Shown in pieces: positions 9,974 through 52,665 of a stretch of 64,000 nt of DNA. This stretch comes from Sminthopsis crassicaudata. Lineage: Eukaryota. The position numbers and the translations under genes were made by a program. Each line of letters begins with the position of its first letter. Within the stretch, counting starts at the first letter, position 1. The notes under the pieces are model-generated. The model had not been told where the DNA came from and searched no databases. It was given only the letters and a program-made list of their open reading frames with translations. The stretch covers positions 162,276,937 to 162,340,936 of the forward strand of contig NC_133617.1 of assembly GCF_048593235.1 (NCBI RefSeq). Reading direction: 5' to 3'.

Positions 9974-10171
9974 CTTGATGGCAGAATTTTTAATTTTATC
10001 CCTTTTTCTATGGAAGCTTAAGGGTAGAAAGAAGATCTCAAGTTAATTAAAATCTCTAAAGTTAATATGACATTTCTTACCTTGAACTAAATATTTCTCA
10101 TTAATATTTCTGTTTTTGAAAAATCAGTTTTTCATATATTCATATATTCATTTTCTTGTATTCTATTCCAG

Positions 10172-31783: not shown

Positions 31784-31992
31784 ATGGTAGAGAAAGAACT
31801 ACATTTTCCAAAGGACTGTGCATCTAAAAGAGAAGCAGACATGTCTTTGAATGAGATGGAGATGAAAACTGATGATCTGTTAGAGAAGGAGCAAATAGAC
31901 AGTGGAGGATTTGGGATGGTATCCTTGTGTTTTCATAGAAATCATGGGCTTGTCATTCTGAAAAATGTATATACCGGACCCAAGCGCACTGA
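31784..31992 (+). CDS. RIPK1: RIPK1 coding exon 1 (exon starts 31775): kinase G-loop and catalytic Lys
   Basis: Encodes [69 protein letters not shown]; donor GA|gtaagt, phase 2 as in human. Confidence 0.95.
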
Positions 31993-32825
31993 GTAAGTTG
32001 GCACAATGAAAAAGTGTGTTAGTCAAATCAGGGTTTTAAGGAACAAAGATAAAGTATCATTTAGCTTGTCTAATTTTAGGGTTTATTGAAAGATGTTTAA
32101 GCTCATACAACAAGGATACAGGATGTATCCTGGTCTAGTTAGATTCCCATGTTTGTCTGGCCAATGAAAATAAAGTCACACACAGACTCAGGAAGTTTTA
32201 TCTGTCTATATCATTGGTTCTCAAAATATGATCCAGAGAATCCTGGGAGTCTCTGATACCCTTTCAGAGGGTCTATAAATTCAAAATTAGTGTTTTTTTA
32301 TTTTTAATACGGTAAATATATATAAATATAATCTATATAACAAAAACTCTTTGGAGAGATCCTTAAAATTTTTTAACAGCATAAAAATTATGAGAACAAA
32401 AGTTTGAGAACCACTGAATTCTAGACAATCACTAGATGGCCCATAGAGATTAGAGGTTCTATAGTTTTTTAATGAGGTTGGGGGAGGAGAGAGGAAATGG
32501 GATGAGGGGAATGAAACAGACAAACACAGAGGAAGAAATGAGAGAGAAAGACAACAGACAAAAAAAATGTGGGCGGGGGAGGAAGAGAGAGCCAGAGATG
32601 GTGGGGAAAAGACACAGGAGAGTGGAATAGCCACAGATAATGGAAATGGCAAAGATGAAGAGCCAATAAAGGAGATTGAAAAGGAACTAAATAAGAGAAA
32701 AATAACATAGCAAAGTCACAAAACCCCAGAACACAAAGTATTTAGGAGGTGAAGATGATCAACCTACTTTTCACAATTCTGATGAAAACCAAGTGAAGGT
32801 GCAAGACGACTATCTTAAAATACCC

Positions 32826-32856
<31 letters not shown>

Positions 32857-33404
32857 AGAAGAAGGAGGAGGAGGAGGAGGAGGAGGAGGAGGAGAAATTC
32901 TTTCACTTGTATCCATTGGTAAGAGGTTTGGTGATCTAACACAGGGATTCAGAACCATTTTTGTGTCACAGACCTCTTTGGCAGTCTAGGAAAGTCTGAT
33001 GGACTCTTTTTGAAGTATTTTTTTAATTGTAATTGAAAGAAATACTCATTTTTGTTAGAAGATATTAAAAATAAAGATATAGTTTTTCCCCCATCCAAGT
33101 TCATGAACTTTTTGAAATCTATTCATAGATCCCTAATGATCCATAAACTTTAGAGTAGGAATCCATGGTCTAACAGAGAGGAATTGTATGTGTGATGGGA
33201 GTTTAATAAAATTTTATTCTAGGACTTGATGTAGTTTTCCAAATAAGTTAATTACATGACTTCTCTTTCATATTCCTCATCTCATTCATTGGAGCCACAG
33301 GAGAAGAATTGTTTAATCCAAGGAATAACATTGAAAGTAGGTTTTCTCCTATCACCTTTTATATAATGGTTATAGAAGGTGTTTTCTCTGGCACTTGTCT
33401 AGAC

Positions 33405-33588
33405 CAGCGCTTCTTAAAGTTTTTCTACTCACGACCCCTTTTTGCTTGAGAAATTTTTGTGTGACCCTGGGTATATAGGTATATAAATCAAATATTTACT
33501 GGTAATAAATCACAATTTTGTGACCCTCCCCCCACATTCAGTTATGAGACCCCATAAGGGGTCACAACCCACAGTTTAAGAAGCTGGG
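33405..33588. mobile_element. hAT-type MITE
   Basis: Imperfect terminal inverted repeats cagcgcttcttaaa / tttaagaagctg, with NNNTAGAN-type flanks gtctagac / atgtagaa. Confidence 0.6.
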
Positions 33589-33685
33589 ATGTAGAACAAT
33601 ATTGAGTTCCAGTTGATGACAGAGTTGTTACTCTGGGACACTAAAGCAGAACTTAACTCTCATTGGCATGTTTCTCCTCCAACAG

Positions 33686-33839
33686 CTATAATACTGCTCT
33701 ACTTGAAGAAGGGAAGATCATGCACAGGCTGAAACATAATCGGGTAGTGAAGTTCCTAGGCTTTATTTTGGAAGATGGGAATTATTCTCTTGTAATGGAA
33801 TATATGGAAAAGGGAAATCTAATGAAGGTGCTGAAGACA
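33686..33839 (+). CDS. RIPK1: RIPK1 coding exon 2 (154 nt)
   Basis: Encodes [51 protein letters not shown]; cag| and |gtaagt. Confidence 0.95.
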
Positions 33840-34138
33840 GTAAGTAAAGAGCTTCTTACACACATATTTTTGTAGATATTGTGGTTGAGCTTTTGTGATG
33901 ATTTTCCATTATGGTCATTTTGGTAGCTTTTTTGCATGTAAATTGACCTAGAAATTTCTTAAGTTTGTTTTTTTTTTTTTTCCCTTAACAATAAAGTTTC
34001 CTCTATAGTATTTCAGAACTACAACTGCCTTTTAAAAGTACAAATATTTTGATTCACTTATGAAAAACCTTTCTGAAACTTTTTCTGACAATCCCAGCTC
34101 ACAGTGAATAATCTTTCTCTCTTCAAAACTCCCATATC

Positions 34139-34284
34139 TGAGGTGGCTAGGTGACACAGTGGTTAGAGCACCAGCCCTGAAGTCAGGAGGACCTGAGTTC
34201 AAATGTGCCCTCAGACACTTAACACTTCCTAGCTGCGTGATCCTGGGCAAGTCACTTAACCCCAATTGCCTCAGCAAAAAAACC
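34139..34284 (+). mobile_element. WSINE1-type SINE with 12-bp TSD (similar copies at about 36817-36960 and 57290-57398)
   Basis: AACTCCCATATC at 34127-34138 and 34285-34296. Confidence 0.8.
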
Positions 34285-37282
34285 AACTCCCATATCATAT
34301 ATTACCCATGTTTTTCATTTGGTACTAAATTGTGTTGTTTGTTCCTTTTTAATGGGCATACACCTATCTGTCTAATTAAACTGTGAGCTCCTTGAGGGTA
34401 GACACTGTACCTCACTATCTAGTACAGAGTTCTCTATAACATAAGGACTCAGCAAATATTTATTAGGTTATTAATCATGTAAATCAATACTCTGAATCTT
34501 TCAACCATGTTTTCTTGGTGTGGATTTTCTCTCCATCAACAGAATACATAAACGCACTTCAATGTCTTATGTAATACCATAGCCAAAATTTTCATCACCT
34601 ATTAGCTAACCTTAAGATGATAAGTTGTAGATGAACAGGGTAAAATAATAGTATAACAGATGTATCATAAGCTAAATGAAGGACCGTTTATTTTATGCTA
34701 AGTATATGGCCTTACTTGTTCTAATTGGATGGGATCAGTGTCAGAAAATATTGCCCCTTTTACCCTTCTCTGGTTTATATTTTTAAAGTAAAGTAAAGTA
34801 ATTTTTTATGGTTTTTGTCTATCTTAGATCCCTAACTTATGCATTTCTTAAAGTTTAATGAGAATACTACATCAAATTCTCTGAAAATTGGTTTTCAGTG
34901 TATGGTATGGGAAATGTAACCATGAAGAAACTAGATTGTTTTTTCATAAATGTTTCAGTTCAATCAGTGTTTGGAAAATTCTTGCTGTGTATATTAGTAT
35001 ATTATCTCAGGCACTGAAGGAATGACAGAGTTTTGACATGATCCCAATCCCACAAGGAAGGGACATTCTAGCAAGGGGCTGTGATAGCCAAGTAACTGTA
35101 GCATTACTGAATGCCTGATACACACATTGAAGAGATGTGAAGAAGAAGATGATCAGGAATGACTTCATAGAGGAGAGGGCCTATGAGTTGGATGTTAAAA
35201 GATAGGTAAGAATTCATTTGAGAAGTGCATAAAGGAGAGATGTTTAGGAAATAGTATTAAGAAAGAAAGAGTGGAAATTCATGTGAGTTTTGGGGGACAG
35301 GATATAGTCCAGTTGGGATCCATAACATAGTATATGAAGGGCAGAAATGTGAGGGAAATCTGAATGGGTTGGTGCCAGATCATGGAGGATTTTTAAATAC
35401 CAGCCAAAGGAGTTGGAACTTCATTCTGTACAAAGAAGGGAACTACTGAGGATTTTTTGAAGGGGCCAAAGAATGAGAAGCCTAGCTCTTTTATTTTGTA
35501 AGTAACATGAAGAATAGAATAGGAGGTGGGAATAGGAGAAGGGAGAAAAAAGCTGTAACAGGATGTCTTGTTTGGATGCTTCTCTGATAGTAGCTGGAAA
35601 TCATTGTTTCCACCCAGCTGGTAGTAACGAGAATGGAGAGGGGCAGATACATCCAGGAGATGCTGCAGAGGTGCAATACTGATGAGTATTATTCTCCAAA
35701 GTCATCATTTCAGAGAGAAGGTGTTGCTATACTAACTTGTTTCATTGATGTTGCCCCTTTCAATACTGCTTTGGAACTCTGCTGCATTTGGAATTCCAGC
35801 TTACAGATCTCATAAGAAGGTCAGCCCTGTTGCTTTGTAGTGAGACCTTTGACAAAAATAAACAACAAACAAAAAAGCCAGGGATCACTAACCTCATTCA
35901 TTAAATTTAGCTCTGGAGGACTTTTAGCTGTTCCCCAAAAACAAATCCATTGTCACATGACAAGAATTTCAAACCCAAGAATGGGCAAAAGAATATGGTA
36001 CACATTGTCATTCTGAAACAGAAGTTCCAATGATGTTTGGATCATTGCAAGCATCATTGGAATACTGTGTTTGCATAGCCTCCTAACACAACTGCTTTGA
36101 AAGGGACAACAATGACTTGAGTGAATTTTAGAGAAATTTTTAAAGAAAAGAAGAAATGTTTTATTACTATGATTGGTTATAAGAATATACCAAAAGGAAT
36201 TCAAATTTTATAGCTTGTTTTTTCCCAGTAATATTTTATGTGGCTTATTTGTTAAAGAGTTGCATACCTTCATAATCACCTATATAATTCCTTTTATTGA
36301 TCAGACCTCTTCTACATTAATATTCACTAAATAGCATAGTGTGGCAGACAGAATTCTGAACTTCAAGTCAAAAGGATCTGGGATTCAAGTTGTCTGATAT
36401 ATATTAGACATATAATATAAGACTATATATAACCTCTTTGAGTCTCAGAATCCTCAGCTGTAAAATGGGATAATGGTAGCACCTACCACACAAGACTATT
36501 ATGAAATTATATGGAGCATATTATGAATGTCAGCTTTTTAAAAAATGTTTTGAAACAACATAGACAAAGTATTAACTTAGTATTACATTGTTGTGATACT
36601 GTGGTATACACACACACACACACACACACACACATACTCTGAAAATCTATAGAGAAACTTTAAAAAATTTTAGTTCTTAAAGTAAAAGTAAAAATAAAAT
36701 TTTTGGTCTTTGTAACAATTCATAAACATTAAAATTTCAGCATATAAAGAACAAGAAAATTTTATGTGAAGCTATCAAAAACATGTTGAAGCATCAAAAC
36801 TCATTAATTAAGTTAGAGGCAGCTAGATGCTCAGTGGCTAGAGCACTGGTCCTGAAGTCAGAAGGACCTGAATTCAAATGTGGCTTCTGGCACTTGACAT
36901 TTGCTAGTTGTGTGATCTTGAGCAAGTCACTTAACCCCAGTTACCTTGCCAAAAACAAAAAAGCACATTAAATTATGTGTAAAACCATAGGGTTTTTTAA
37001 AAAGTATATAGTAATTTTAATATGGTAGTAACAAAATTGCCTTGTTTGTGTCACCTTAAGAGAAAATTTTCAAGGAAAGGGGAAATTTTTACTATTACCA
37101 TGTTATAAGAATGTCGCAAAAATAATTCAAATTTTCAGGATACTGTTAAAGGGGTAGATACAATCACGGTGATTAAATGGTACCATTTTTACTGCATTGC
37201 TCTTCAAAGAACTGATAATTATAGTCTTGTCTTGTCTTTTTGTTTCTTTATTTACTAGAACTCTCTGTCATTTTTGTTTTAG

Positions 37283-37420
37283 ATTAGTATCCCCTTGTCT
37301 GTGAAAGGGAGAATCATTCTAGAGGTCATTGAAGGAATGTGCTACTTACACAGAGAAGGTGTAATTCACAAAGACTTAAAGCCGGAAAACATCCTTGTGG
37401 ATAATGACTTTCATGTTAAG
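37283..37420 (+). CDS. RIPK1: RIPK1 coding exon 3 (138 nt): catalytic loop
   Basis: Encodes [46 protein letters not shown]; size equals the human exon. Confidence 0.97.
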
Positions 37421-39551
37421 GTGAAGATGGAGCTCACAGAATGCTGGAATCACTCTCTCATGCAATCTTTCTACTCTGGTCTGTATATGTCTTCTGTGTG
37501 CTGAAAGCAATGTCAGCATACAAGATATCAGGTGGTTATAGTTTAAAAAAAGAAAAGAAAAATAAATAAAAAGAGAAAAGAAAAATAAAAGATTAGCATT
37601 GTGGAATTGGAGGATAAAATATTCACTACTATTTCTTACACTGATTCCAGGTTAAGAGCAACATTTATTAGTCTTTCTGGTCACACCAAAATTATATGGA
37701 TTTTCCTAAGCAGAGATAAAACTGTTCCCTTTGACTTTTCATTTGTACATTTTTGTTTCTCTCCTATTTTCCCTTTTTTGTGTTTTCTTTCTGATTTCTG
37801 TATTTTCTTTACTGTCTCCTGGATATGTCCTCAGGGTATCTCTTGCTGAATGAAACTTCTGGTTATGTGTAGCAGTTTATATCAACTGACCAGTGGAGAT
37901 TATTGGGGGAGAAATATAAAGTACACACCCCCCCAGGTCATTTGCTAGCTACTCAGACAGGAGGTCTATTGAAAAGAAATTTTTTTCTTCCCCCTAGAAA
38001 TTTCTGAATAACATAAGGAAAAAGTAGAAAATTTTAAAAGGTTTTTTTTTAATCCTTTCTTTGATCCTAGCAGAAAGTGCCTTTAGCTTTTTTATATGTG
38101 CTTTGGAATTTTTTACAGAAATTCAGATAAAAGAACAAAAGGAAGAAATTAATTTCCAAGATACATTTCCAAAGTAATTTCTGGATTCCTAAGAAACAGT
38201 GGAACATTGTAGTATGATGATAAAGAGTTCTAAGTGTAGAGCCAAAGGGTCTTGGTTAAAATTCCAGTTCTGACATTTACTGCCTATATGACTTTACACA
38301 TCTTGAATTCACTTTCTTTATTTACTTTATATTAATCTTTCCTATATTTAAAATGAGAAGATTAAGCTAGATGTCTTCTCATATCTCTTTCAGCTCTAAA
38401 TCTATGACAGTAAGCCAATAATTTATTATTGACAGTTTTCATTTAGATAAAGTAGTCAGGACTTTTTAAAGGTAATTTTAGTAGTTAAATTTTCCTAAAT
38501 AATAAACCTTTATCTGAATGCTATAATTTTTAAAAATTCATTTTGTTTTCCTTCGTTTTCAAAGAGGACCAATGACGTCACAGAGTTATGTTTTGACTTG
38601 CTCATGAAGTGGATTTAAGTTAGGCAGAGCTGTGCAAAGTCCTCAATCTCACTCTCTCTGTCTGAGTCATTGAAGTTCAGTGGCAGAACAAAGATTAAGA
38701 TGACCTGCAGTAGTCCAGAATATATTGGGTGACTTTGGCATCTTGTTTGCCCAGCAAAGTTCTCAATGCTCCCCAATGCTGCTTCAATTGCCTTCACATG
38801 GTCATTGGGGGGAAACTTGTTCTTGGAGCCACAAGTGAGATTTTGGTGAAGGTAGATACCAAAAGTGGGTTAACAGCCTTGAAAAACGTTCAGCAAACTC
38901 TCCTACCAGATATATTCCTGCTCCCTGAACACCTCATACACCACAGCAGCTAGATGATGAAGTGGATAGAATACTCAGCCTGGAATCAGGAACATTCTCC
39001 TGAGTTTAAATCTGGCCTCAGACATTTATTAACTGTGACCCTGGACAAATCACTTGACCCTGTTTTGCTTCAGTTAGTCATCTGTACAATGAACTGGAGA
39101 AGCTAATGGCAAATTATTTCACTGTCTTTGCCCAAAAAAAATCTCAAATGGAGTCAAGAAGAGTTGGACATCACTGAAAAAAACAACTAAACAACAACTT
39201 CTGACTCTAAATCTAGTGCTATTTCCTCTATACCATATTTCCTCATATTTCTAAAAATTAATCTATCTGTAATGACTTGTATAAAACTAAAATTTTCTTC
39301 AAGATTTCATATTGCCTTTCTTAATACAACATTTACTAAGCATTGTATTAGGTAATGGAGATACATAAATGAAAAATAACTCAATCTCTGCTCTTGAGCT
39401 TACAGTCTAATAAATGATACAACATATACACACACACATATAGAAACACATACATTTATACATACACACACACGTACATACATGTCACTTTCCAAGATTA
39501 CCTCACTTATGTATCCTGTTTTCTGATCTCTGGTTTTGCCTTCTTTTGCAG

Positions 39552-39813
39552 ATAGCAGATCTTGGTGTTGCCTCCTTTAAGACTTGGAGCAAACTGACTA
39601 AAGAGGAAAACAACAGGCAGAGGAAAATAAATACTGCTGCTAAGGGGAACGCTGGCCGTTTAAGTACCTCAGCTGAGGCAAATGCTGGCACCCTGTTGTA
39701 CATGGCTCCAGAACACTTGAATGATGTCAACGCAAAGCCCATTGACAAGTCAGATGTGTACAGTTTTGCTATAGTGCTCTGGGCAATTTTTGCAAACAAG
39801 GAACCATATGAAA
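39552..39813 (+). CDS. RIPK1: RIPK1 coding exon 4 (262 nt): DLG motif and activation loop with an 11-aa insertion
   Basis: Encodes [15 protein letters not shown]...[37 protein letters not shown]. It is 33 nt longer than the 229-nt human exon. Confidence 0.97.
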
Positions 39814-40855
39814 GTAAGACATATGTAGGAGAATATCATATGATTAACCCAAATTGTCCCATGATATTAAGACCTTTAAAATTGCTAAATATTAAGATCT
39901 TTGGAAAATCAGTTACAATTTGAAGGAAACCTGGGCTAAAAATAAAAGATTCATAGAAGAAATCCTAATACTTCATCTAAACCTTGCATGGGATCTTTAA
40001 AGTCATCAACAAAAGGGGATTCATATATTTATTTAACACAACTTGAGCAAACTGCTGTGCTAATCTCTGAAGGACAGAAAGATGTATAAAACATAATTCC
40101 TATCCTCAAAGAACTTACAATCTAGGAGAGGTATAAAACAAAACAGGCACACCACAGAACAGCCTATCATTAGATGTTCTGTTGCAGAAAAAAAATAATG
40201 GAAATTGACAGTTTGGGAACTACAAACTAACTTTTTAGGGGTGCCAGCTAGTAGGAAGGGGTTGATTTTTTGGATTTTGGATTTGAGCTTTTGGATTGAA
40301 CTAGTCTGGATATAATGGTGAAAGTGAGTAGAAAATAACATAGGAAAAGAAGGTGCAATATATCTGTGGTGTCTCTGGTGTTGAAGCCTGAGTTTTTATC
40401 CCTTATGTTATCATTAATGCTCTTAGATATCTATCTGTTCGTATTGTTCCAAAGTCCATACATAATGTGTATCAGAACAATGAAGTTGTGATTAAATCCA
40501 GCTTATCCTATTTGGATTGTACTAACTGAGCTTGTTCTCAATTTCCCATCCCTAGTAAAGAATGCTCAGTTGTTATTAGAGATATTTAATGTAGGGAAGG
40601 TGATCTCCCCCTTACTGGAAGACTTTGAAAAGGGGCACAATGACCATTTCATGAATCTCACTTGTTTTTTCATTGAATTTATAGAAATTTATAATGGTAA
40701 TGGAGGATAGAATGGGAATTGTTCCTTGATTTCAGAACCTTACAGTATAAGGAGATATATACATAAGATACATATATGCATACCTACACACACACCAATA
40801 CACAAACTAGGTAGAAGAACTAAAGAAACCTCTTGAAGAGGGTGAAAGAGGAGGG

Positions 40856-41612
40856 GACAAAAGCTGGTTTAAAACTTAACATCAAAAAAACTAAAATCTT
40901 AACAACTAGTTTCATCACTTTCTGGTAAATCGAAGGAGAAGAAATGTAAAGTGTCAAATTTTGTATTCTTGGGCTCAAAGATCAGTGTAGATGGCAACCA
41001 CACTTATGAAATTAAAAGATGCTTGCTTATGGCAAATCTGGGCAGCATCCTAAAAGACAGATGTAATTTTGCCAACAAAGGTCTGATTTGGCAAAGCTAT
41101 GATTTTTCTGACTCATATCAGGAAGACCTGAGTTCAAATTGAACCTCAGAGACTTATCTTGGGAAAGTAACTTAACCCTGTTTAACCCAATTTCCTCATC
41201 TGTAAAAAGAACTGGAGAAGGAAATGGCAAAGCACTTCAGTATTTTTGCCAATAAAATCCCACAAATGGGTCACAAAGAATCAGACATGACTGAAATACC
41301 TGAATATTATAGCTGCAAGAGTTGGATAGTAAAGAAAACTGAATGCCTCAGAATCACTGCTTTGAAATCATGGTGCTAAAGAAGCCTTTTAAGACTCCCT
41401 TAGACATCAAGGAGATCAAATCTGTCAATACTTAAATAAATTAGTTAAGGAAATTCCCTAGAAGGTCAAATATTTGAATTGAAGCTTTAATATTTTAGCA
41501 ACATAATAAGAAGACGTGACATTGGAAAAGACCCTGATGTTGAGAAAGATTGAAGGAAAATGGAAAAGGAGACAGCAGAGGATGAGATGGAAAGATAGTG
41601 TCATAAAAGCAA
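40856..41612 (+). mobile_element. BovB-like RTE LINE 3' fragment, interrupted by a SINE at about 41110-41300
   Basis: Matches recalled BovB 3' consensus (tgaaattaaaaga, ttgccaacaaaggtc, ttggaaaagaccctgatg, cagaggatgagatgg). Confidence 0.75.
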
Positions 41613-42533
41613 TGAGAAGTAGTGGATTCCTCTTCACTGGATATATTTGAAGAGAGACTGAATAACCATTTATTGGGAGATAGAGGGAATTCTTGTTCAG
41701 GCATGGATTGGATGGCCACTCAGATTCCTTGAGACTCTGAAATCCTGTAATTCTGGGATGTTGACAGAAAGTATCCTGTGAAATTTAAGGAGTAAAAACC
41801 TGCTTTTAGCTAGGGCAACCTAATAAGCAATAGGTGGCATCTGAGATAGACTTCCCAGAAAGGAAAAGAATCTTCACAGGCAGAAATGTGGAAGGAAGAT
41901 CTCCCATGTATAAAAGATGGTCTATGAAAATGTCAAAAAGATGGGAAATGGCTGGTAGTCATGTCTAGAGAATTGCATACTATGTGAAAATAAATTGAAC
42001 AAAAATATGACTTGAAAGAGAAGTTGTAGAGGACCTTGAATGCCACCCTAGCTCGTTTTGTATTTTATCCTAAAAATTAGTAAGCCACAGGTAACATAGT
42101 ACTATTCTCTATATTATATTATATTCTCTATATTAGGAAGATTATTTCAGTACTATGGAGATCACGGTGTGGAGCTGGCCTTGGATTTTTGAAGTTTCTG
42201 TTAATGGATCAGAAATTTACTAGTCTTGCTAGTATAGATAAATCATTGCTCCCAGTTAAATTTTGAGAACTTAGAAGGAAACATGAGTGATAATAGTGTA
42301 GCTGGGAGGTAGAAGCCTTGAGATATCTCATTCCTTAAAAAGATGACCTATAAAATTCCTTCTAACTAAGGGATACTCTTAAGTTACTCTATGCCATTGT
42401 AGAAATTAAAAGCAATTCTTGGTACAGATAAAGGTAGAAACTTTGTTTACATATCTTCCTTTGACTATGAGCTTTGCCATGAAGGAAAACTGGAGCAAGA
42501 AGGGCAATGATGAAGCTTATCTTTGCCTTTCAG

Positions 42534-42683
42534 ATGCTATTTGTGAACGACAAATAATAACATGCGTTGGAAATGGAAACAGACCAAATGTGGCAGAAAT
42601 TGCTGAAAAGTGTCCAAAGGAGATTATTAATCTCATGGTACGGTGCTGGAATGGGAATCCAAAAGATCGACCAACCTTTAATG
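42534..42683 (+). CDS. RIPK1: RIPK1 coding exon 5 (150 nt)
   Basis: Encodes AICERQIITCVGNGNRPNVAEIAEKCPKEIINLMVRCWNGNPKDRPTFN; size equals the human exon. Confidence 0.95.
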
Positions 42684-45086
42684 GTAAAATATCTATGAAT
42701 CTAGCTATACCCATACAAAGATTTTTAGGAATGCTGCTGATAGGAGCTCAGAAAATCAAGTCCAAAATTCTGAACAGTTTCAAAGTGACTTTCCAAATCT
42801 TTTAAAATGACTTTTTTTAAGCATTCAAAATAACAAAGCCAAATATCTCATTTCTATCCTTTGTCTCTCTTCCTTCCCCTAGTGTGTTAAACATGTGTTT
42901 GACAAGTGACAAGTGCATAACTCAGCATATACTGTACATTAGTGTGTTCAGCTGATATAACTGCCAAGTAAAAGGGCTGGAGTCCCTGCTTTTGAAGAGT
43001 CATAATGATACTGTGAAACATAAAAACGTTCTGTGACTGATTCTGATCTTCATGAAAGACAGAAGTTTTTTTGATTGGCTGTAGTTGTAGAATGGGGACC
43101 GTCTTCAAAAGGCCTCCTGCTTTCTCATTTGGAGTTCTGATCTTGGTTTGATTTCTTGATCATTGGCATGCGTGAGTGACAATGATATAAGAGGAGAACC
43201 CTAGACTCTCTCTTGTAGCCTAGGAATACAGGTTCAAGTTCTTTGCCTGCTGTGGTATTTGTTCTTTTTCATTTTAGGTGAAGGAAGTTGAGGGCTGTGA
43301 CTTTTGTGAGTTTCAGACAGTCAGTAGAGCAAGCTATCCAAGGTGTAGGTGTTCAGAAGGCCTGCTTTCCTGACTTTTTGAAATACCAAAGACAGTAGCC
43401 TCCAATTTCCTGCTTCTCAGGGTATCAATGGGTTAACCTCAAAGCTTGGCCCTGGTCTAGGGAACAGGATTCCCAGGCCAAGGTCTTTCCCCTTATAAAA
43501 GACTTTCTCTGGCCCAACACTATCAACAAAAAAAGTCAGATTATGAGTAGAGGTTGCTCATCACTATCAACAAAGAAGTGAGTTCCTGACCAAGAAAGCA
43601 AGAGGCCATTGAACAAATTGATGTACTCTGTGTAGGCTTTATAGGACAGACTTATTGGCAAATCCCATTATACTTGCATTGTCTGTGTGTGTGTATATGT
43701 GTGTGTGTGTGTACACGTTCAGTTTAGAACAAGAATATACATTGGAGAGAGGAGCAGGGAAGGAATAGAAATGAATAAGAGAAAGCCTCATTGAGAAAGT
43801 GGTACCTGTCATGGAGGAAGGGAAGTTATCAAAAGGAGTTGAAAGGGGGAGGCAGGAGGACAAAGGCAGGCAGACTTGTGAGAATGATCAGAGACAGAAA
43901 GATGGGAGAGAGCAGGATAGAATGAGTAGTTCTTTTTGATAGGAAAGCAGGGCAAAAGTGTAGAGAATATATGATGATAATAATAATAATAGCTAATAAT
44001 CCTTAATATGTGCCATGTAAGTGTTTATAACTATTACTTTATTTACATTATTATCTTATAACATCCCTGGAAGGGAGGTCCCCATTTTACAGATAAAGAA
44101 ATTGAGGCAAACAGGGGTTGTTATATGCTCAGGGTCATACATCAAGTAAATATCTGAGGCCATAGGCTACCAAGTATTGGATTGTAGCAACTCAAGAGCC
44201 TTTGTCACTTCCTAGAGATTCTTCCTATCTAGTCTGTGATCAATTTTCTTATTCTCTTTATCACAGAACTATTTCCTTTTATTGTTTTGTTTTTTCTAAT
44301 CACTCTTTAGGAGCATTTCCCCTTGTAAAAATGACAATCATTACTTTTACTTTTGTAAAACACTGGTCAGTGAAGAACACTGATGAATGGCAACATGAGG
44401 AATAAAGGCTTAATCAAGCAAATAGTGAGAAGCCAGTGAAGCTTTTGAGCAGAAGATTGCTATGATCAGAGCGATACAATAAGGGAAATTTTATTGGGCA
44501 GGTAGAGAAAGATGAGTTGAAGAAGGGAAAGACAAAGGCAGGAAGAGCCCTAAGGAAAGGAAAATCATTTCAGGGATAATATAGAAGAGAGAATGGATCC
44601 AAGAAAAATTGGAGGAAGAAGGGGATAGATTCACAAGCAACTTAGCAATCAGTTAATAAAGAGTGACTTCCCTTCTCACTTGTCCACACAGAATTCTTAA
44701 TCCTCTCTTTGCTTTTGTACATTGAACAGTGTCTTCTTGCTTTGTCATCAAGGATACATAGTTCCCAATCATTTGAAGCAGTAAATCAAAATAAGAAGTG
44801 CTGAGTCAGTCTGCTCTGATCTATGAAGGGGAATCTGGGAAAAACAATACCAACCCAAGACCTTGTGCTTCCTAGAGCCTCCTAGCATGCTTTATGTCCT
44901 GTCTAGTATATTAACAACTCTTTTATTAATTTTCTTTACTAAGGAACTATTTCCCACCCCAACCCCCATTTCCAATGAACTCTATAGTCACTTCAGGGTC
45001 AATTCACTTTATATAGATAACAAATCAACATTTTTACTCTTGTGTTACAAAATGTTAAAACTTTTAAAAAAAAATTTTTTTTACAG

Positions 45087-45163
45087 AAATTGACCAAGAA
45101 TTCAGACCTTTATACCTTGAACAATTTGAAAAAAAGGTAGAAGATGATGTAAAGAACTTAAAA
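45087..45163 (+). CDS. RIPK1: RIPK1 coding exon 6 (77 nt)
   Basis: Encodes IDQEFRPLYLEQFEKKVEDDVKNLK; cag| and |gtaagt; size equals the human exon. Confidence 0.93.
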
Positions 45164-45345
45164 GTAAGTAGTTTAGTTGATGTATAAAAATGGGAATTTA
45201 TGTAACATATTTGTATGCTTAAACATAAGTAAGGAGGGATAGCATTACTGTTTTTATAGTTTTTCCCAAGCACTTCATCTTGGTGATAACAAAACATGAA
45301 CATTAGCAGCTAAGTTTTCCTTTGTTTTTCGTATTATGTGTGTAT

Positions 45346-45354
<9 letters not shown>

Positions 45355-45403
<49 letters not shown>
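45355..45403. repeat. (TG)n microsatellite; other simple repeats at 16491-16555, 19224-19262, 32826-32895 and 58748-58820
   Basis: Read directly from the sequence. Confidence 0.95.
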
Positions 45404-45408
<5 letters not shown>

Positions 45409-45559
45409 ACATAAGGAAAAGAGGATCAAAGAAAGAATGAACCCCTCAGCTCAGGGTGGATTAAACAATTAAAATGGAAAGGAAAATCTAAGAGCGGGAC
45501 AACTTTTACTCTGTTTCTGCTTTCTTTTGGTCACAATCTTTGGACCAGAAAGGATAGAC

Positions 45560-46800
45560 CAAAAAATGGGTAATAGGGAGTTGAAACTCAAGATAAGTAG
45601 AAAGATAATAATGTCTAGCTGCTCTTGATGACCAAAGTAAACTAGATCCTTGGATACTGAAAGAACTGGTAGCTGTAATGACTGATCCATTGTCAGTGAT
45701 TTCTGAAAGATGGTGAACAGCAGGGGTACTCATGCCTGAAGAAGGATAAATGCTGTCCCAATTTTCAAAAAAGTGAGCTGTTGAATCTGCAAATTACAGA
45801 CCCAAGAGCTTGACTTCAATGACAATGAACCTTTTACTGAAGTTATGGTTCGAACATCTAGTAAAGGAAGCAATGGTCACAGAGAATGATCAATATGTCT
45901 TCATCAAGAATAGAATCATGCCAAACCAACCTTCATTTTTTGACAGGATTCCTCAGGTCAGAAGAATGCTACAGTTACAGTATCTCTAGATGTCAGCAAA
46001 GTATTTATAAAACTTTTCACGTTGTCTTTATGGAGAATATGAAAAAAGTAGACTAGATGATAACATAGTTAGCTGGATTCAGAATGTGCTAAATTGCTAG
46101 AAAATATTGCAAGCTGAGGTTGCATGATAAAGTGGAGAGAGGACTGAACTTAGGGTAGTTGGATTCAACTTCCTACTCTAACAATTCTTAGACAGTTGAA
46201 TCTGGGTAAGTCATTTAATCTTCTCTGTGTTAGTTTTTTCATCTGTAAAATAAAGACGATAACAATTCCCAGCCTATTTCATAAAATTCTTGCCAAGAAA
46301 ACATTTTGCAAACTTTAAAATGCTACATAAATGTGAACTGTTGCCATTATTATCATTCAGAGTTCAGTGTCAACTTTGAAAGAGATCTTTATTAGAATAT
46401 CCCAGGGATGGTCTTTGGCTTAGATGATGGCACACTTATCATGTTTATAGATAACACAGAAATGGAAGGCATAGCTAACACATTAAGTGGCTAAATCAAG
46501 ATCCCAAAGCATCATGACAGTTTAAAACAAAGGACTAACTCAAATATGGTGAAATTTTATTATAGTACTTTACAAGTTCTAGTTAGAGATTAACTGACTG
46601 TGAAAAAGATAGGGGTTGGGTAGAGTAATGGATTGTATTCTTAATATAAATCAATAAATAGTGTGTAATGAAGTCTTAGGATATGTGAAAAGATAAATAG
46701 TGCAGGTAAGAGCCCTACTGTATTCTGCCCTGGTCAGACAACACTCTAGGGTATTGTGTTCATTTCTAGGTGCAACCTTTTAATAAAGATACTGACACTA
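45560..46800 (+). mobile_element. Ancient L3/CR1 LINE fragments
   Basis: CR1 RT-region motifs (aaagaactgg, tgtcccaattttcaaaaaag, tctgcaaattacag). Boundaries approximate. Confidence 0.6.
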
Positions 46801-46849
46801 TCTTCTGGGAAGACAGTAGAATAGGTCAGAATATTTCAAGCTCTCCAGA

Positions 46850-48150
46850 CTTCCTCCACAAGCAGAACAAAATTATACTTCATGGTGAACAGAGACTGAT
46901 GGAAAAAAAAAAAAAAGTAAGACTTGAGGCAGAATAGGAGTCCTCCAGACCCTGGGAGCGAAGTGTAAACAATTCCAGGCTGACTCCACCAAAACAGCAA
47001 GCTATCCTTGGGATAACTAGGTTTGGAGGTAGTCTCTGTCACAATCTCAAGAACTTTCACTTCTGGGGTAGCCTGGAGAGTCAAGGGTCTGAGTCGGAGA
47101 AGACTAAAGGAACCTCTGCTGATTAAGAATGTCAGGCCCAGTTGTGCTTCCAAGATTCCGCCTCAGACAAAGAGGAACCATCCAAAACCTGGGGAGTACA
47201 GAAGCAGTGGGGCAGGGATGCTGCTGGCTGTAGGCACTTGCAGGAAGGTGGATCAATTGGTTTGGGATTCCAAGATAGGGGAGAGAGTTGAAGTGAAGCC
47301 AGAAGCACCATCTTCTCTACCCAGGATTAAAGGAGGTTAACACTAATACTTTCCATTAAAAAAAATAAATAAAAATAATAAGCAGGCAAAGGGGAAAGAA
47401 TCTAACCATAAAGACTTACTATGGAAATAGGGAAGATTGAAGTTCATAGAAGAGGATATTGAAGTTAAAAAAAAGTCTTTCCTATACCAAAGAGTAATGT
47501 TAAATGGCTCCCTGCCCACAAAGAATTTGCAGAGGAAAAACTAAAACAAATAAATAAATAAATAAATAAATAAGAGCTACCCAAGAAAAACAAGTAGATT
47601 ATAAAAAAAAAATCTAACCAAATAGAAAAGGAGATACAGAGTCTTAGAGAAGAATGTAATTCTTTAAAAATTAGAATTGAACAAGAAGAAGCCAATGAAG
47701 CTATGAGACCAAGAAATAAAACAAAAAATAATGAAAAAATACAATAGAATGTAAAACATAAGAAAAACAACATAACTATGGAAAACAGATCAAGAAGAGA
47801 AAATATTAAGAATAACTGGCCTACTTAAAAACTGACCAAAAAAAGAACCTTGATACAGTAATGCAAAAATTAATCAAAGAAAATTGTCCTAGAATTATAG
47901 AAACACTAGGGCAAAGGAGAAATAGAAAAAAAAAAAAAATCCACTAATCACCACCTCAAAGAGATCCTAGATGGAAAACACAGAGGAATATTATTGCCAA
48001 ATTTCAAATACTCCTCCCCCCCAGACCAAAGAGAAAATCCTACAAAAACAAAACAAAACAAAACAAACAAACAAACAAACCCAATTCAATTCAAATATGC
48101 TGGAGCTGCAAATAGAATTGTAGAAGATTTATCAGCAGCTACAAAAAAGA
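46850..48150 (+). mobile_element. L1 5'UTR/ORF1 fragment, 3'-truncated
   Basis: Degenerate ORF1p: coiled-coil region, tccactaatcaccacct, attgccaaattcaaa, FKYAGA. Ends about 45 nt before a RIPK1 acceptor. Confidence 0.7.
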
Positions 48151-48193
48151 CTGCAGATCCTGAAATAATTTGTGTTTTGGGCTTTTTCTGTAG

Positions 48194-48284
48194 GAAGCAT
48201 ATCCTGCTCCAAATGAAGTAGTGAAAAGGATGCAGTCTCTCCAGATTGATTCAGTACCAGTGCCCCCAAGCAGAACAAATTCAG
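48194..48284 (+). CDS. RIPK1: RIPK1 coding exon 7 (91 nt): MK2 site and caspase-8 cleavage site
   Basis: Encodes EAYPAPNEVVKRMQSLQIDSVPVPPSRTNS (human KRMQS320LQLD324). Not in the ORF track because it is short. Confidence 0.95.
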
Positions 48285-49801
48285 GTAACTTCCAGGATAC
48301 TTGCAAGTCATTTCATTTGTGCTTTCACTCATTCACTTAACTAACATTTGTTGAGGATTCACTATTTGTAAAATGGTTCTCAAGACAAAGCAAGATACAG
48401 AGAAATGTAATAGTTGTTCTCTGCCCTCAAAAATTCTTCATAATCTTCTCAGGGAGTCAAAATGTATACACAAAACTTTAAATAAAAACAAAGAGTTATC
48501 AGAAGCAGAATGTGACTAAATTTCAGATAAATGGCACAGATGATAAGAGTATATCATTACTGCCACTTCTTAAGATTGTGGTATTTGGGAGTAAAACTGG
48601 CTGAAGTCAGCTTCCTATTTATGAAAGACTCCCTGACCTTTATCAGCCATAGTAATGGAATCAGTGGAAAAAACACATTCATAGAAGGAGGCTGACTTAG
48701 AGAGTATTCTCATAGCATAGCATCTACAGACTTTGACCACATTTTCATCACAGACCTCTTCATACATGCTTGACTTATGGGTGATAGAAAAAATGGACTT
48801 CCTTTTCCTCAGGAATGCAAATAGGATAATTCCCCTGACAGTGTTCTTGAAGGGATGGCACAGAAATATCCATTGGGAAGGATGAACTTTATTGTTGCCC
48901 ATAGATGCTTTTCTCAAACCCTATTCTCATATTTGAATTCTGCAATTCAAAAAAAAAATGTTATCAGTTCACCAACAATATGATAGCAGTTCTGCCTTTG
49001 TCTACTTCCCTAAAAAATGTTGACCACAAGAACTTCAGCCAGAAGGGTTATATCAAAGCTGCTGGCAAGCAGAATCCTCCCAAGCCCATTTTATGGGGCT
49101 GCATGTCCCGCACCTGCCCTCTCAACCTCTAGGCCTTGTCACACTTCTCTTTTCTTGTTGTGTTCTCTACAGGCCCCATGTGACCTTAACTTAGCTGGCA
49201 AAATACTGAGGTTTTGAAGATATTTTCACAACCACTCTATAACTACATGTTACATACAAGATGTGAATTATTTCTTGTCATAGAAATGCTTATGAGCAAG
49301 GTTATAAGGAGAATAAATGATCTCGTTGCAACATTTATTTAGAATAATGGATGGATGAAAAGATGTTTTGATTTTAAAAAAGAAAAAAAAACCTTTAATT
49401 GTGGTAACTTTCCTCCTTTTTCCTCACAACTAATAGAAATAATTCCTTGGTATTCCTCTTTTAACTGGGGTACTTTTATTTCTGGATTTCTCTTTATATC
49501 ATACCCTTCCCCTTAGATATGAATTATCATTTGTTATCTCTCTTAATTCCTATGGGAAAGAAGAGACTCATAGACTTCTTATAATTGTTTTCAAATTTTT
49601 CTATGGTGTTTTGATAAGATTCAATGACATAATGATGGTGAGATTCATTTGAGATAATGTACATAAAGCACTTGGCAAATAAACGAAATTTTTATGTAAA
49701 TAGCAACTGTTATTATTTATGACTTTGTTAAGATATTCCATATTTTTAAAAATGTATTGAGAAGCTTTCATTTAATACTTCTGTTTCTTTCCATGCTACA
49801 G

Positions 49802-50365
49802 AACAGCCCAATTCACTCCATAGCTCTCAGGAACTCAGGACTAGTTGTGTTGATGAGTCCATGTTTGCTCCCTGCCCTGACAACCAGCCAGAGGAGAGTG
49901 AGATCTCTCCTGAGGCCCTCATTCTACAAAGCAAGCTACAGGAAGAGGCAAACTACCATCTTTTTGGCAGCCGAATGGATAAGGGGACAAATGACCACCT
50001 TAGATATCTTGCAGCTAAAAGAGAAGAAGAAAGGAGACGAAGAGTCTCCCATGATCCTTTCACAGTGGCACCTGTTCAACCTCAGAAGTATGAGTTTCAT
50101 CAGAATACTTTTATTTCTGAGGGGGGCTCCTGTCCTCCCAATGCAAACAGTCATAGCAATCTGTTACATCAACCAGCAGCGCTACCTACCCCATTACAAG
50201 TACCAATATTGAATAACCATCAAGTTTTTGGATCAAGGTCAATAGATCCAAGAGCAAGCAATATGTATGGAGTAAACCTAAGCAGTGTAGCTACCCCCTC
50301 TAAAATACCTGTTCCTGAGTCTACCACAGGAGCAAACATGCCAACTCTTCCATTTGATGCAATAG
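49802..50365 (+). CDS. RIPK1: RIPK1 coding exon 8 (564 nt): intermediate domain
   Basis: Encodes QPNSLHSSQ...LQSKLQEEANYHLFGSRMD...REEERRRRVSHDPF...IPVPE; phase 1 at both ends. Confidence 0.95.
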
Positions 50366-52665
50366 GTAAGAAATTCAACTTTTTGACTTGGACTCTCTTA
50401 TCTGGTTCTTTCCTATGTCTAGTAGTTTCCTGAAAGTAAAGTTGACACTTTATGACATATTCTATGTCTATTATGACATATTCATATGGATAGCAATTAT
50501 CTTTTTAACATTAGTTTTTTAGGATGGCAAGACAGTCGGGATCCAGTGAGTCGCCCAAGGTCAGACAGCTAATAAGTGTCTGGGGCCAAATTTGAACTCA
50601 GTCCATGCTCACCCTTCTCTTTTTATTATTTGGCAAATGCCAAGTGCACAGAACCATGAATTGGCTACTTAGAGTAAGGATTTTGGTCCAAAAGAATTTG
50701 TTAAGCAGAGATTCTTAACCTAGCATCCATTAACTTGTTTGTTTTTTTAAATATATTTTGCTAATTATTTCAATATAGGGCAACTGGGGGGCACAGTGGA
50801 TAGAGTGCCAGGCCTGAAATTAGGAAGAATCATCTTCCTCAGCATAAATCTGGTTTCAGATATTTAATAGCCGTATGACTCTGAGCAAGTCATTTAACTC
50901 TGCCTGCCTCAGTTCCTTATCTGTAAAATGAACTAGAAAAGAAAATGGCAAACCATTTAATGTTTTTGCCAAGAAAACTCCAAATGAAGTCATGAAGAAT
51001 CAGACAGGACTAAAAATAATGGAATAATAAACAACAATTTTAATATAATTGATTTCCTTTGTAATTCTGTGTATCATATTTTTGCACTTAATAGAATTAT
51101 TCTATTAAAAGGTCCATAGGCTCTACCAGACTGCCAAAGGAGTCTATAACCTGCCAAAAAAAAATTAAGGATTCCTGCTTTTTTTTTTTAGTTTTTTTTT
51201 CTTTTCTTATTTTTCCCTAGTTTTTAAACATTTTTATTTAAAGTTTTAAGTTCCATATTTTAGCCCTCCTTACTTCCTACTTCCCTGAGGTGTTAAGCAG
51301 ATATTATGTAAAACATTTCCATATTAGACATTTTGTACAAGAAGACTGGAATAAAAGAAAAAGAACAAAAGTGAAAAATAGCATGTTTGAGTCTATATTC
51401 AATCAATATCAGTTCTTTCTCTAGAGCCGAATAGTATACTTCATCATTAGTCCTTTGGAATTGTCTTGAATCACTGTATTGCTAAGAATAGCTAACTCAT
51501 TCACAGTTCTTCATGGAATCATGTTGCTATTAATGGGTACAACATTCTCCTAGTTCTTTACTCCACTTCACTTCACTATGCATGATGATATGCATCAGTT
51601 CATATAAGTTTTTCCAAGACATCCTGCCTGTCATTTTATAGTACAATAGCATTCCATTACAATCATATTGTTAGTTATTCCCCAGGCATCACTTCAGTTT
51701 CCACAAAAAGTTGTTAATTTTTTTTTGTACAAATAATTCTTTTTCCCTCTTTTTATTGGATGTTTTTGGGATATAAACCTAGCAATGGTCTCGTTGGATT
51801 AAAGGGTGTGTGTATGTATATGTATATAACCCTTTATAGCCCTTTGGGCATAGTTCCAAATTGCTCTTCAGAAAGGTTGGGTCAGAAGAACTCCTATTTT
51901 AGAAAATTTAAGATCTCCTCACTTCATGCTTTATGGACAAAGACAAGTGATTATTTTTAAGAGTTCTAAGCACAGTTTTTTTTAAATGGAGAAAGCTTAC
52001 AAATGGCAGTCATCAAAAAGGATACACTAAAGCACATCTTTGTATGTGGTATACTTTGTACTTCCACATTGCAAAAACCAAGAATCACTATCCTAGAGAT
52101 AACAATATTACAAGTAAGTAATATACGTCAAAAAATTATTTATCTTCTAAAACCTGTTCTGCAAGTCATATATGAGCACAGAAAAGCCTAAATATGTCCA
52201 TTCTCTCTTATTCCTTTGGACTACTTCTTCCTATTCTAGTTGGATTCATTAGTAAAATAATTTTTTCCATAGATATCTTATGGAACTTAACAAAATGTAA
52301 AAGTAATTCAAGTTGTTGAAAATTGTCTCGTCTAGAGAACAGCTGTAGATACTTATTTGCTAAATATTGCTTTTATTATTTCTCCACACTGTATTTTTCT
52401 TTGGCCTCTGGGAAGCTTTGGCTTATAAATTCTTGATCTTGTGTTCTTATGGGATTGTATATTTAGTGCTAAGAAGCACTTTGATAGCTATCTAGTTCTT
52501 GCTAGTTGGCGTTATAATTTTCTCATTTTTATAGCTTGAAATATTTAAATATATTTTAAATATATAATAATAACAAATAAGAAAGGATTTGCTATGTTTT
52601 TATTTTTGTCTCCTGAAGGTAAGGAGTAAGACTTAGATTTTGTAATTTTTTTTGTCATTATACAG

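What the first reader, a model, noticed from the sequence alone, without database searches (positions are those of the whole stretch)
39624..39689. 11-aa tandem duplication inside the RIPK1 kinase activation loop
Seen: two adjacent 33-nt units, aaaataaatactgctgctaaggggaacgctggc ([11 protein letters not shown], 39624-39656) and cgtttaagtacctcagctgaggcaaatgctggc ([11 protein letters not shown], 39657-39689), 21/33 nt identical by my count. They make the exon 262 nt versus 229 in human. Known: this loop lies between DLG and APE and carries S161/S166 (autophosphorylation) and T189 (TBK1/IKKe inhibitory site), all retained here. It also shapes the necrostatin allosteric pocket. Inference: an old, retained duplication that added three Ser/Thr behind an Arg just before the T189 equivalent. 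It could alter activation, substrate access or inhibitor sensitivity in a lineage reported to lack RIPK3/MLKL.
Basis: partly seen in the sequence, partly recalled or inferred. Interest (0 to 1): 0.8.

Follow-up and report, generated by a model that had tools for sequence, protein, structure and literature searches.

The report
Marsupial RIPK1 activation-loop 11-residue duplication
The cell-death kinase RIPK1 of a dunnart carries a real, transcribed 11-amino-acid tandem repeat in its flexible activation loop; the repeat arose before living marsupials diverged, was lost again in at least two lineages, and looks more like a tolerated loop extension than a new regulatory device.

Summary
Two adjacent 33-nt units (39624-39656 and 39657-39689) match at 21/33 nt. 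They lie in a 262-nt RIPK1 exon that is 229 nt in platypus and Dromiciops. Human RIPK1 aligns with an 11-residue gap exactly there.

The window encodes a protein identical to the Sminthopsis crassicaudata RefSeq RIPK1 model. RNA contigs from three studies contain the whole exon, spliced at GT..AG.

The insert is present in 10 of 12 marsupial species sampled, including the didelphid Gracilinanus. It is absent from Monodelphis, Dromiciops, platypus, every eutherian sampled, and the sampled sauropsids, amphibians and fishes.

The second unit of Gracilinanus matches the second units of Australian species (7-9/11) better than its own first unit (5/11). This points to one stem-marsupial origin followed by two exact-unit losses.

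The insert evolves roughly 7-14 times faster at the protein level than the rest of the exon, and AlphaFold2 predicts it to be disordered. The S161, S166 and T189 equivalents are retained in the dunnart. The "Arg + three Ser/Thr" pattern is dunnart-specific.

The most likely reading is a weakly constrained extension of the disordered loop tip. A regulatory role is untested. I found no paper describing the duplication. Interest is moderate to low.

The parts
39624..39656 (+). Repeat unit 1 ([11 protein letters not shown]). It is the slowly evolving copy, orthologous to the single unit kept by Dromiciops.
   Evidence: 30-33/33 nt identical to unit 1 of Sarcophilus and koala, and 29/33 to the single Dromiciops unit.
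39657..39689 (+). Repeat unit 2 ([11 protein letters not shown]). It is the faster evolving copy and sits directly before the T189 equivalent.
   Evidence: 21/33 nt to unit 1. It is 24-30/33 nt to unit 2 of koala and Sarcophilus. Gracilinanus unit 2 is 7-9/11 aa identical to Australian unit 2.
39552..39813 (+). RIPK1 coding exon 4 (262 nt), running from IADLG to EPYE. It covers the activation segment and kinase subdomains VIII-IX.
   Evidence: Splice joints 37420|39552 and 39813|42534 are seen in RNA contigs of three runs.
39558..39566 (+). DLG motif (human D156-G158 equivalent), the start of the activation loop.
   Evidence: Read from the sequence and from the alignment to human RIPK1 chains.
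39573..39575 (+). Codon of the S161 equivalent (Ser).
   Evidence: Alignment to human RIPK1 with native numbering. This position is Phe in didelphids and Ala in platypus.
39588..39590 (+). Codon of the S166 equivalent (Ser, in WSK).
   Evidence: The column is invariant in 35 vertebrate RIPK1 sequences (W179 and S180 of P0348).
39690..39692 (+). Codon of the T189 equivalent (ACC, in [10 protein letters not shown]), immediately after unit 2.
   Evidence: G213 and T214 of P0348 are invariant in 35 vertebrate sequences.
39705..39713 (+). APE motif, the end of the activation segment.
37283..37420 (+). RIPK1 coding exon 3, containing the catalytic loop HKDLKPEN.
   Evidence: It is joined to exon 4 in RNA contigs.
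42534..42683 (+). RIPK1 coding exon 5.
   Evidence: It is joined to exon 4 in RNA contigs.
31784..54983 (+). Whole RIPK1 coding region, 11 coding exons. The spliced product is identical to the Sminthopsis crassicaudata RefSeq model XP_074126678.1.
   Evidence: 697 of 697 residues are identical from residue 20 on, and the 19-residue N-terminal extension is encoded directly upstream.

Best explanation
A 33-nt in-frame tandem duplication, most likely from replication slippage or unequal exchange, arose in the RIPK1 activation-loop exon on the marsupial stem lineage, before didelphids and Australidelphia split. The two copies have since diverged to about 64-70% nt identity. One copy was later removed exactly in the Monodelphis and Dromiciops lineages.

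The duplication lengthens the DLG-to-APE segment from 41 to 52 residues. The extra residues sit in the tip of the loop. That tip is the only fast-evolving part of an otherwise strongly conserved exon. It already varies by indels across vertebrates, and it is predicted to be disordered.

The catalytic motifs and the S166 and T189 sites flanking the insert are untouched, and the insert is in the mature mRNA.

Shown here: that the duplication exists and is transcribed, which species carry it and that the units are orthologous (from which the timing and the two losses follow), its relaxed constraint, and its predicted disorder.

Inferred: the duplication is a tolerated, weakly constrained extension of a flexible loop. 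At most it modulates loop dynamics or adds optional Ser/Thr acceptors. It is not a required new regulatory element and not a response to the loss of RIPK3/MLKL.
For: Existence and identity:
- Searches place the units and identify the gene.
- Pfam finds kinase, RHIM and death domains, and the top 50 PDB fold matches are all human RIPK1.

Transcription:
- Contigs in runs X3, X8 and X12, from three studies, span exons 3-4-5 with no changes.

Distribution:
- The loop is 52 aa in Sminthopsis, Antechinus, Sarcophilus, Macrotis, koala, wombat, Petaurus, Notamacropus, Trichosurus and Gracilinanus.
- It is 41 aa in Monodelphis, Dromiciops and platypus, 41-43 aa in the eutherians tabulated, and 40-45 aa in sauropsids, amphibians and fishes.
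- The Dromiciops genome lacks exactly 33 nt.

Single origin:
- Gracilinanus unit 2 is 7-9/11 identical to Australian unit 2 but only 5/11 to its own unit 1.
- Gracilinanus and Monodelphis are close sisters in the gene tree, with 100/100 support and branch lengths of 0.03-0.05.
- dS between units 1 and 2 is about 0.9, against 0.27 between dunnart and koala for the rest of the exon.

Weak constraint:
- dN of the insert is 0.04-0.13 against 0.006-0.013 for the rest of the exon. Omega is 0.2-0.7 against 0.02-0.05.
- Two lineages lost a unit.
- The composition is dominated by A, N, K, T, G and S.

Disorder:
- pLDDT is below 50 for residues 196-212 of P0348, while the domain folds well with pTM 0.82.
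- The literature describes the human loop as flexible and unresolved in crystal structures (PMC8169668).

No link to necroptosis loss:
- Birds (reported to lack RIPK3 and ZBP1) have a 41-aa loop and a felid (carnivores are reported to lack MLKL) has 42 aa (PMC12119088).
Against: The length has stayed at exactly 11 residues in 10 lineages over the whole marsupial radiation.

Several insert columns are invariant or nearly so: Leu, Ser and Thr at positions 2-4 of unit 2, and the A-N-A-G ending.

Omega is below 1. These three points allow for some function.

The rate estimates rest on 22 codons and three species, so they are noisy.

AlphaFold2 disorder is a prediction, made with a 35-sequence alignment.

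No experiment was done, so an effect on autophosphorylation, on TBK1/IKK-epsilon access to T189, or on inhibitors that contact residues 174-181 (Nec-34; PMC8169668) cannot be excluded.

The absence in Monodelphis was seen only at the protein-model level (two annotation sources), not in DNA.
Confidence: 0.62

Rival explanations
1. The duplicated unit is an adaptive, marsupial-specific regulatory module. It would add phospho-acceptor sites or a docking element next to T189 and so retune RIPK1 kinase activation or checkpoint control in a clade that has lost RIPK3, MLKL and ZBP1.
For: - The duplication and the reported loss of RIPK3/MLKL/ZBP1 both characterise marsupials (PMC12119088, PMC5900707).
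- Thr at position 4 of unit 2 is invariant, and Ser at position 3 is present in 9 of 10 species.
- The length is conserved and omega is below 1.
- The insert abuts T189, an inhibitory TBK1/IKK-epsilon site (PMC11275223). It also follows the stretch equivalent to human residues 174-181, which contacts Nec-34 (PMC8169668).
Against: - Two marsupial lineages, which by the published reports on marsupials also lack necroptosis genes, removed a unit.
- Birds and carnivores lost necroptosis genes without any loop expansion.
- dN of the insert is about ten times that of the flanking exon.
- The Arg and the third Ser/Thr are lineage-specific.
- The region is predicted to be disordered.
- The co-occurrence is a single evolutionary event (n = 1).
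Confidence: 0.2
2. The duplication arose twice independently, once in the Gracilinanus lineage and once in the ancestor of Australian marsupials. Under this view, Monodelphis and Dromiciops simply keep the ancestral single unit.
For: It needs two events rather than three on the species tree. The Dromiciops unit is entirely unit-1-like, and the Monodelphis unit is mostly so.
Against: - Gracilinanus unit 2 shares Leu, Ser and Ala (positions 2, 3 and 8) with Australian unit 2. It is 7-9/11 identical to those units but only 5/11 to its own unit 1.
- Gracilinanus and Monodelphis proteins are separated by only about 0.08 substitutions per site. That is far too little time for a new copy to diverge at 6 of 11 residues.
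- It would also require the same length, site and register twice.
Confidence: 0.04
3. The extra 33 nt is an assembly or annotation artefact, or is removed from the mature mRNA.
For: None found. Logan contigs can hide rare isoforms (tool caveat).
Against: - The same 262-nt exon is present in independent genome assemblies of Sarcophilus and koala, and the insert is present in the RIPK1 proteins of ten marsupial species.
- RNA contigs from three studies contain it unchanged.
- No GT..AG pair could excise 33 nt as an intron.
Confidence: 0.01

Closest known systems
[quoted passage not shown] PDB 4ITH, 4NEU, 6C4D
   Same: It is the same gene by orthology, with kinase, RHIM and death domains. The exon is about 83% identical outside the gap and aligns end to end. 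HKD, DLG, APE, S161, S166 and T189 are all present. The predicted fold matches human RIPK1 kinase domains (E = 6e-33; TM by target 0.86).
   Different: The DLG-to-APE segment is 52 residues rather than 41, because of the duplicated 11-residue unit directly before T189. The RHIM core is IQFG rather than IQIG. The host lineage is reported to lack RIPK3, MLKL and ZBP1.
RIPK1 of Monodelphis domestica and Dromiciops gliroides (marsupials without the second unit)
   Same: These are close orthologues. The Monodelphis protein is sister to that of the insert-bearing Gracilinanus. Loop flanks are identical and the single unit is unit-1-like.
   Different: They have a 41-residue loop and, in Dromiciops, a 229-nt exon. 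They act as natural 'revertants' and could serve as controls in functional tests.
Small loop-tip indels in RIPK1 of other vertebrates (turtles, crocodilians and Latimeria +4; Hymenochirus +5; Tamandua +2; a felid +1)
   Same: The position in the activation loop is the same, the inserted residues are likewise polar or small, and the flanks are conserved.
   Different: Those indels are shorter. They were not tested here for being duplications of the neighbouring residues. The marsupial insert is the longest seen and is a recognisable tandem copy.
Internal tandem duplications in kinase genes (e.g. FLT3-ITD in leukaemia; PMC10251898)
   Same: Both are in-frame tandem duplications of a short coding segment within a kinase gene.
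   Different: FLT3-ITD is somatic, lies mainly in the juxtamembrane region, and is activating and pathogenic. The marsupial RIPK1 duplication is germline, ancient, fixed, in the activation loop, and has no demonstrated effect. This is an analogy only.

Membership tests
RIPK1 orthologue | N-terminal Ser/Thr protein kinase domain | tested here: met
   Pfam Pkinase E = 1e-48 over residues 35-307 of P0348, which is identical to the window's product. The top 50 PDB fold matches are human RIPK1.
RIPK1 orthologue | Catalytic motifs intact (HKD catalytic loop, DLG, APE) | tested here: met
   HKDLKPEN is in exon 3; DLG and APE are in exon 4. H150, K151, D152, D170, L171, G172, A219 and E221 are invariant in 35 vertebrate sequences. 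Kinase activity itself was not assayed.
RIPK1 orthologue | RHIM in the intermediate domain | tested here: met
   Pfam RHIM scores 20.6 bits against a cut-off of 20, at residues 581-595. The core is IQFG. The match is only just above threshold.
RIPK1 orthologue | C-terminal death domain | tested here: met
   Pfam Death E = 3e-20, residues 630-712.
RIPK1 orthologue | Groups with RIPK1 of other vertebrates in a species-like tree | tested here: met
   The gene tree recovers monotreme, eutherian and marsupial clades with 100% support. The best hits are all named RIPK1.
Tandem (internal) duplication | Two adjacent units of equal length that are more alike than chance allows | tested here: met
   21/33 nt here and 20-23/33 in Sarcophilus and koala. 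Only two loci in the 64-kb window reach 21/33 at this lag.
Tandem (internal) duplication | Outgroups carry a single unit, and the length difference equals one unit | tested here: met
   The exon is 229 nt in platypus and Dromiciops and 262 nt in dunnart, devil and koala. Human RIPK1 shows an 11-residue gap.
Regulatory phosphorylation element of the activation loop | Conserved phospho-acceptor in a kinase consensus, with phosphorylation observed | not testable with these tools
   Thr at position 4 of unit 2 is invariant in 10 species, but the Arg at -3 is found only in dasyurids. No phosphoproteomic data were available.

The most novel reading that the evidence does not exclude
The stem-marsupial duplication created a second, diverged copy of the segment that precedes T189. 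That copy would act as a clade-specific regulatory element, either a decoy or extra phospho-acceptor or a spacer that alters access of TBK1/IKK-epsilon to T189 and loop dynamics. It would re-set the threshold for RIPK1 kinase-dependent death in animals where apoptosis is the only RIPK1 death output. Monodelphis and Dromiciops would then be natural loss-of-element variants.
Probability: 0.15. Interest if true: 0.6.

Novelty: new variant of a known kind. Interest (0 to 1): 0.35.

Why it matters
RIPK1 is a major drug target, and its activation loop carries the sites that switch it between survival signalling and cell death.

Marsupials offer a natural variant with a 27% longer loop (52 against 41 residues) in a background reported to lack necroptosis. 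They also offer two natural revertants, Monodelphis and Dromiciops. This is a ready-made comparative system for asking how far the length of the disordered loop tip affects autophosphorylation, checkpoint phosphorylation at T189, and allosteric inhibitor binding.

There is a practical point too. The opossum, the usual laboratory marsupial, is not representative of most marsupials at this site.

If, as I think most likely, the insert is nearly neutral, the value is modest. It would be a clean, datable example of a coding tandem duplication with later exact reversal, and a warning against reading function into lineage-specific Ser/Thr.

Tried and rejected
- Tandem Repeats Finder on the exon found nothing. 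The copies are too few and too diverged, so I counted identity at a lag of 33 nt directly instead.
- The 87-aa exon searched against 50%-identity cluster representatives returned no marsupial representative.
- A search with a bat RIPK1 listed only eutherians in its 120 rows.
- Marsupials were reached only with a profile of coelacanth RIPK1 plus window exons 1-4. Alignments that also included the later exons were scrambled by MAFFT and were dropped.
- No DNA could be fetched for Gracilinanus, Monodelphis, Macrotis, Notamacropus or Trichosurus because the files were too large. Three protein look-ups failed: two because only the longest isoform is indexed, one for an entry held only in UniRef. 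Nucleotide analysis is therefore limited to dunnart, devil, koala, Dromiciops and platypus.
- A different duplication register, with the unit ending in G-x-L, gets no support at the nucleotide level. The six bases after each unit match at only 1/6, by my reading.
- Alternative splicing that removes 33 nt is rejected. No such joint or deletion appears in the RNA contigs, and no usable splice sites exist.
- Five literature searches found no description of the duplication.

Full report
**Observation.**
At 39624-39656 and 39657-39689 the + strand carries two adjacent 33-nt units. They encode [11 protein letters not shown] and [11 protein letters not shown] and match at 21 of 33 positions. Scanning the whole window at a lag of 33 nt, only two places reach 21/33: this one and an unrelated spot at 48023-48030. 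Tandem Repeats Finder reports nothing, which is expected for two copies at 64% identity.

The units lie in an exon bounded by ag|ATAGCA and GAAA|gtaaga, at 39552-39813, which is 262 nt. Its 87-residue translation aligns end to end with residues 154-229 of human RIPK1 crystal constructs (E = 2e-29). The alignment has a single 11-residue gap just before the G-T189-L motif.

**The gene.**
All eleven coding exons of RIPK1 are in the window, from 31784 to 54983 on the + strand. The product spliced at canonical sites is identical over 697 of 697 residues to the RefSeq model XP_074126678.1 of Sminthopsis crassicaudata. The model's 19 extra N-terminal residues are encoded directly upstream. The window is therefore fat-tailed dunnart or something indistinguishable from it, and the insert is already part of a public predicted protein.

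Pfam finds kinase, RHIM and death domains. An AlphaFold2 model of the kinase domain has human RIPK1 structures as its top 50 PDB matches.

**Transcription.**
I laid Logan contigs of four RNA runs on 37200-42750. Three runs, from three different studies, each have one contig of 2.0-2.6 kb carrying exon 4 and exon 5 in full; in X8 and X12 it also carries all of exon 3, while the X3 contig reaches only 28 nt into exon 3. There are no differences and no gaps. The joints are GT..AG at 37420|39552 and 39813|42534. No contig omits bases inside the exon. Contigs can miss rare isoforms, but the main mRNA contains both units.

**Distribution.**
A profile built from coelacanth RIPK1 plus window exons 1-4 retrieved marsupial RIPK1 proteins. 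A second search with the dunnart protein showed ten marsupial clusters and no more.

| Group | DLG-to-APE length |
|---|---|
| Sminthopsis, Antechinus, Sarcophilus, Macrotis, koala, wombat, Petaurus, Notamacropus, Trichosurus, Gracilinanus (a didelphid) | 52 |
| Monodelphis, Dromiciops, platypus | 41 |
| Eutherians tabulated | 41-43 |
| Birds, lizards, turtles, crocodilians, amphibians, coelacanth, lungfish, ray-finned and cartilaginous fishes | 40-45 |

At the DNA level the exon is 262 nt in devil and koala and 229 nt in Dromiciops and platypus. The Dromiciops assembly lacks exactly 33 nt, between two near-identical AA(C/T)GCTGGC ends.

**Dating.**
The units are orthologous across species.
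- Unit 1 copies are 30-33/33 nt identical among dunnart, devil and koala.
- Unit 2 copies are 24-30/33 nt identical.
- Unit 1 against unit 2 is only 20-23/33.

Gracilinanus unit 2 (HLSTTAKANAG) is 7-9/11 identical to the unit 2 of Australian species, but only 5/11 to its own unit 1.

A gene tree built without the loop tip places Gracilinanus and Monodelphis as close sisters, with 100/100 support and branch lengths of 0.03 and 0.05. It recovers monotremes, eutherians and marsupials as expected. A recent independent duplication in Gracilinanus could not have diverged at 6 of 11 residues in that time.

Synonymous divergence between the two units is about 0.9. Between dunnart and koala it is 0.27 for the rest of the exon (only about 8 synonymous sites, so this is rough).

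The simplest history is one duplication before the didelphid-Australidelphian split, followed by two later losses of exactly one unit.
- The Dromiciops unit is unit-1-like throughout (29-30/33 nt).
- The Monodelphis unit is 9/11 unit-1-like, with one unit-2-like residue. That fits unequal exchange but does not prove it, because platypus has the same residue.

The first codon of unit 2 is CGT or CGC (Arg) in dasyurids and TGC (Cys) in koala. It is Cys in wombat and bilby and His in four other species. An ancestral CGC changed by CpG transitions would explain this pattern. This is inference.

**Constraint and structure.**
By Nei-Gojobori counts, the 22 insert codons have dN 0.04-0.13 and omega 0.2-0.7. 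The other 65 codons of the exon have dN 0.006-0.013 and omega 0.02-0.05. Unit 2 changes faster than unit 1.

Some columns are fixed: Thr at position 4 of unit 2, and the A-N-A-G ending. Others take three to five states. The residues are mostly A, N, K, T, G and S.

AlphaFold2, with a 35-sequence alignment, folds the domain well (pTM 0.82). It gives pLDDT below 50 to residues 196-212 of the dunnart protein. That stretch runs from the fifth residue of unit 1 to the tenth of unit 2.

Published work describes the human loop (Asp156-Glu196) as flexible, fast-exchanging in HDX, and missing from crystal structures (PMC8169668). The solved chains have 247-286 modelled residues, most from constructs of 287-313 residues, which is in line with this.

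The S161, S166 and T189 equivalents are present here. S166 and G-T189 are invariant in 35 vertebrate sequences. T189 is reported as an inhibitory TBK1/IKK-epsilon site, and S161 and S166 as autophosphorylation sites (PMC11275223, PMC12462663).

'Three Ser/Thr behind an Arg' is specific to Sminthopsis. Devil and Antechinus have RLSTA. Other species have C or H in place of Arg, and V, M or T in place of the third Ser.

The necrostatin pocket is lined by the DLG-to-S161 end of the loop (PMC8169668). The insert is more than 30 residues further on. It does follow the stretch equivalent to human 174-181, which was reported to contact Nec-34 (PMC8169668). An effect on that inhibitor class is conceivable but untested.

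**Interpretation.**
What is shown is a real, transcribed, stem-marsupial tandem duplication in the disordered, indel-prone tip of the RIPK1 activation loop. It has weak sequence constraint and two natural reversals.

From this I infer that it is most likely a tolerated loop extension with at most a modulatory effect (confidence about 0.6).

The main rival is that it is a clade-specific regulatory element linked to the reported loss of RIPK3, MLKL and ZBP1 (PMC12119088, PMC5900707, PMC9573974). Conserved length, a few fixed Ser/Thr positions and omega below 1 keep this alive. It is weakened by the two losses within marsupials. It is also weakened by the 41-42-residue loops of birds and a felid, groups that lost necroptosis genes as well. 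I give it about 0.2.

Independent origins and artefact are nearly excluded.

**Novelty.**
Five full-text searches found papers on RIPK3/MLKL loss in marsupials and on RIPK1 evolution, but none that mentions this duplication. The sequence itself is already in public protein models.

I rate it a new variant of a known kind, of moderate-to-low interest. Its main use is as a natural system, with built-in revertants, for testing what the length of the loop tip does. It is also a caution that the opossum is atypical of marsupials at this site.

Noticed in passing
window 39573-39575 (the S161-equivalent codon) and the related proteins P0285, P0354, P0293: The S161 position is the autophosphorylation site that also hydrogen-bonds Nec-1s in human RIPK1. 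It is Ser in the dunnart and other Australidelphians. It is Phe in both didelphids (DLGVAFF), Ala in platypus, Thr in coelacanth and Cys in many sauropsids. So this 'key' residue is not conserved outside eutherians and Australidelphians.
   Followed up: no
window 53939-53950: The RHIM core is IQFG in Sminthopsis and in both didelphids. It is IQVG in Antechinus, Sarcophilus and most other marsupials, and IQIG in wombat, platypus, eutherians and crocodile. The third core position therefore varies within marsupials, even among dasyurids.
   Followed up: partly
window 52666-52743: The 78-nt in-frame exon before the RHIM is needed to reproduce the RefSeq dunnart RIPK1 model exactly. It is therefore an annotated coding exon rather than an unannotated extra. 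RNA support was not checked here.
   Followed up: partly
window 31784-31840: An upstream in-frame ATG in the first coding exon adds 19 residues ([19 protein letters not shown]) before the Met that aligns with residue 1 of the bat and coelacanth RIPK1 queries. The RefSeq model uses it. Which start codon is used in vivo is unknown.
   Followed up: no
window 39042-39151 and 41160-41269: Two direct copies (74% identical) of an interspersed repeat sit in the introns on either side of exon 4. They draw very high summed contig depth (about 1,200-10,000) and many chimeric joints in the RNA runs. They probably belong to an abundant SINE-like family.
   Followed up: partly
window 6483-7412: A 310-residue open frame on the + strand has a reverse-transcriptase-like sequence (YMDD-type motif region), upstream of RIPK1. 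It is probably part of a retroelement pol gene. I only observed it.
   Followed up: no
window 48023-48030: This is the only other place in the window where sequence 33 nt apart matches at 21/33 or more. It lies in the intron about 165 nt upstream of exon 7. I did not examine it.
   Followed up: no
related proteins: The same loop tip carries smaller length changes in other vertebrates: +4 in turtles, crocodilians and coelacanth, +5 in Hymenochirus, +2 in Tamandua and +1 in a felid. It appears to be a general indel hot spot in RIPK1.
   Followed up: partly
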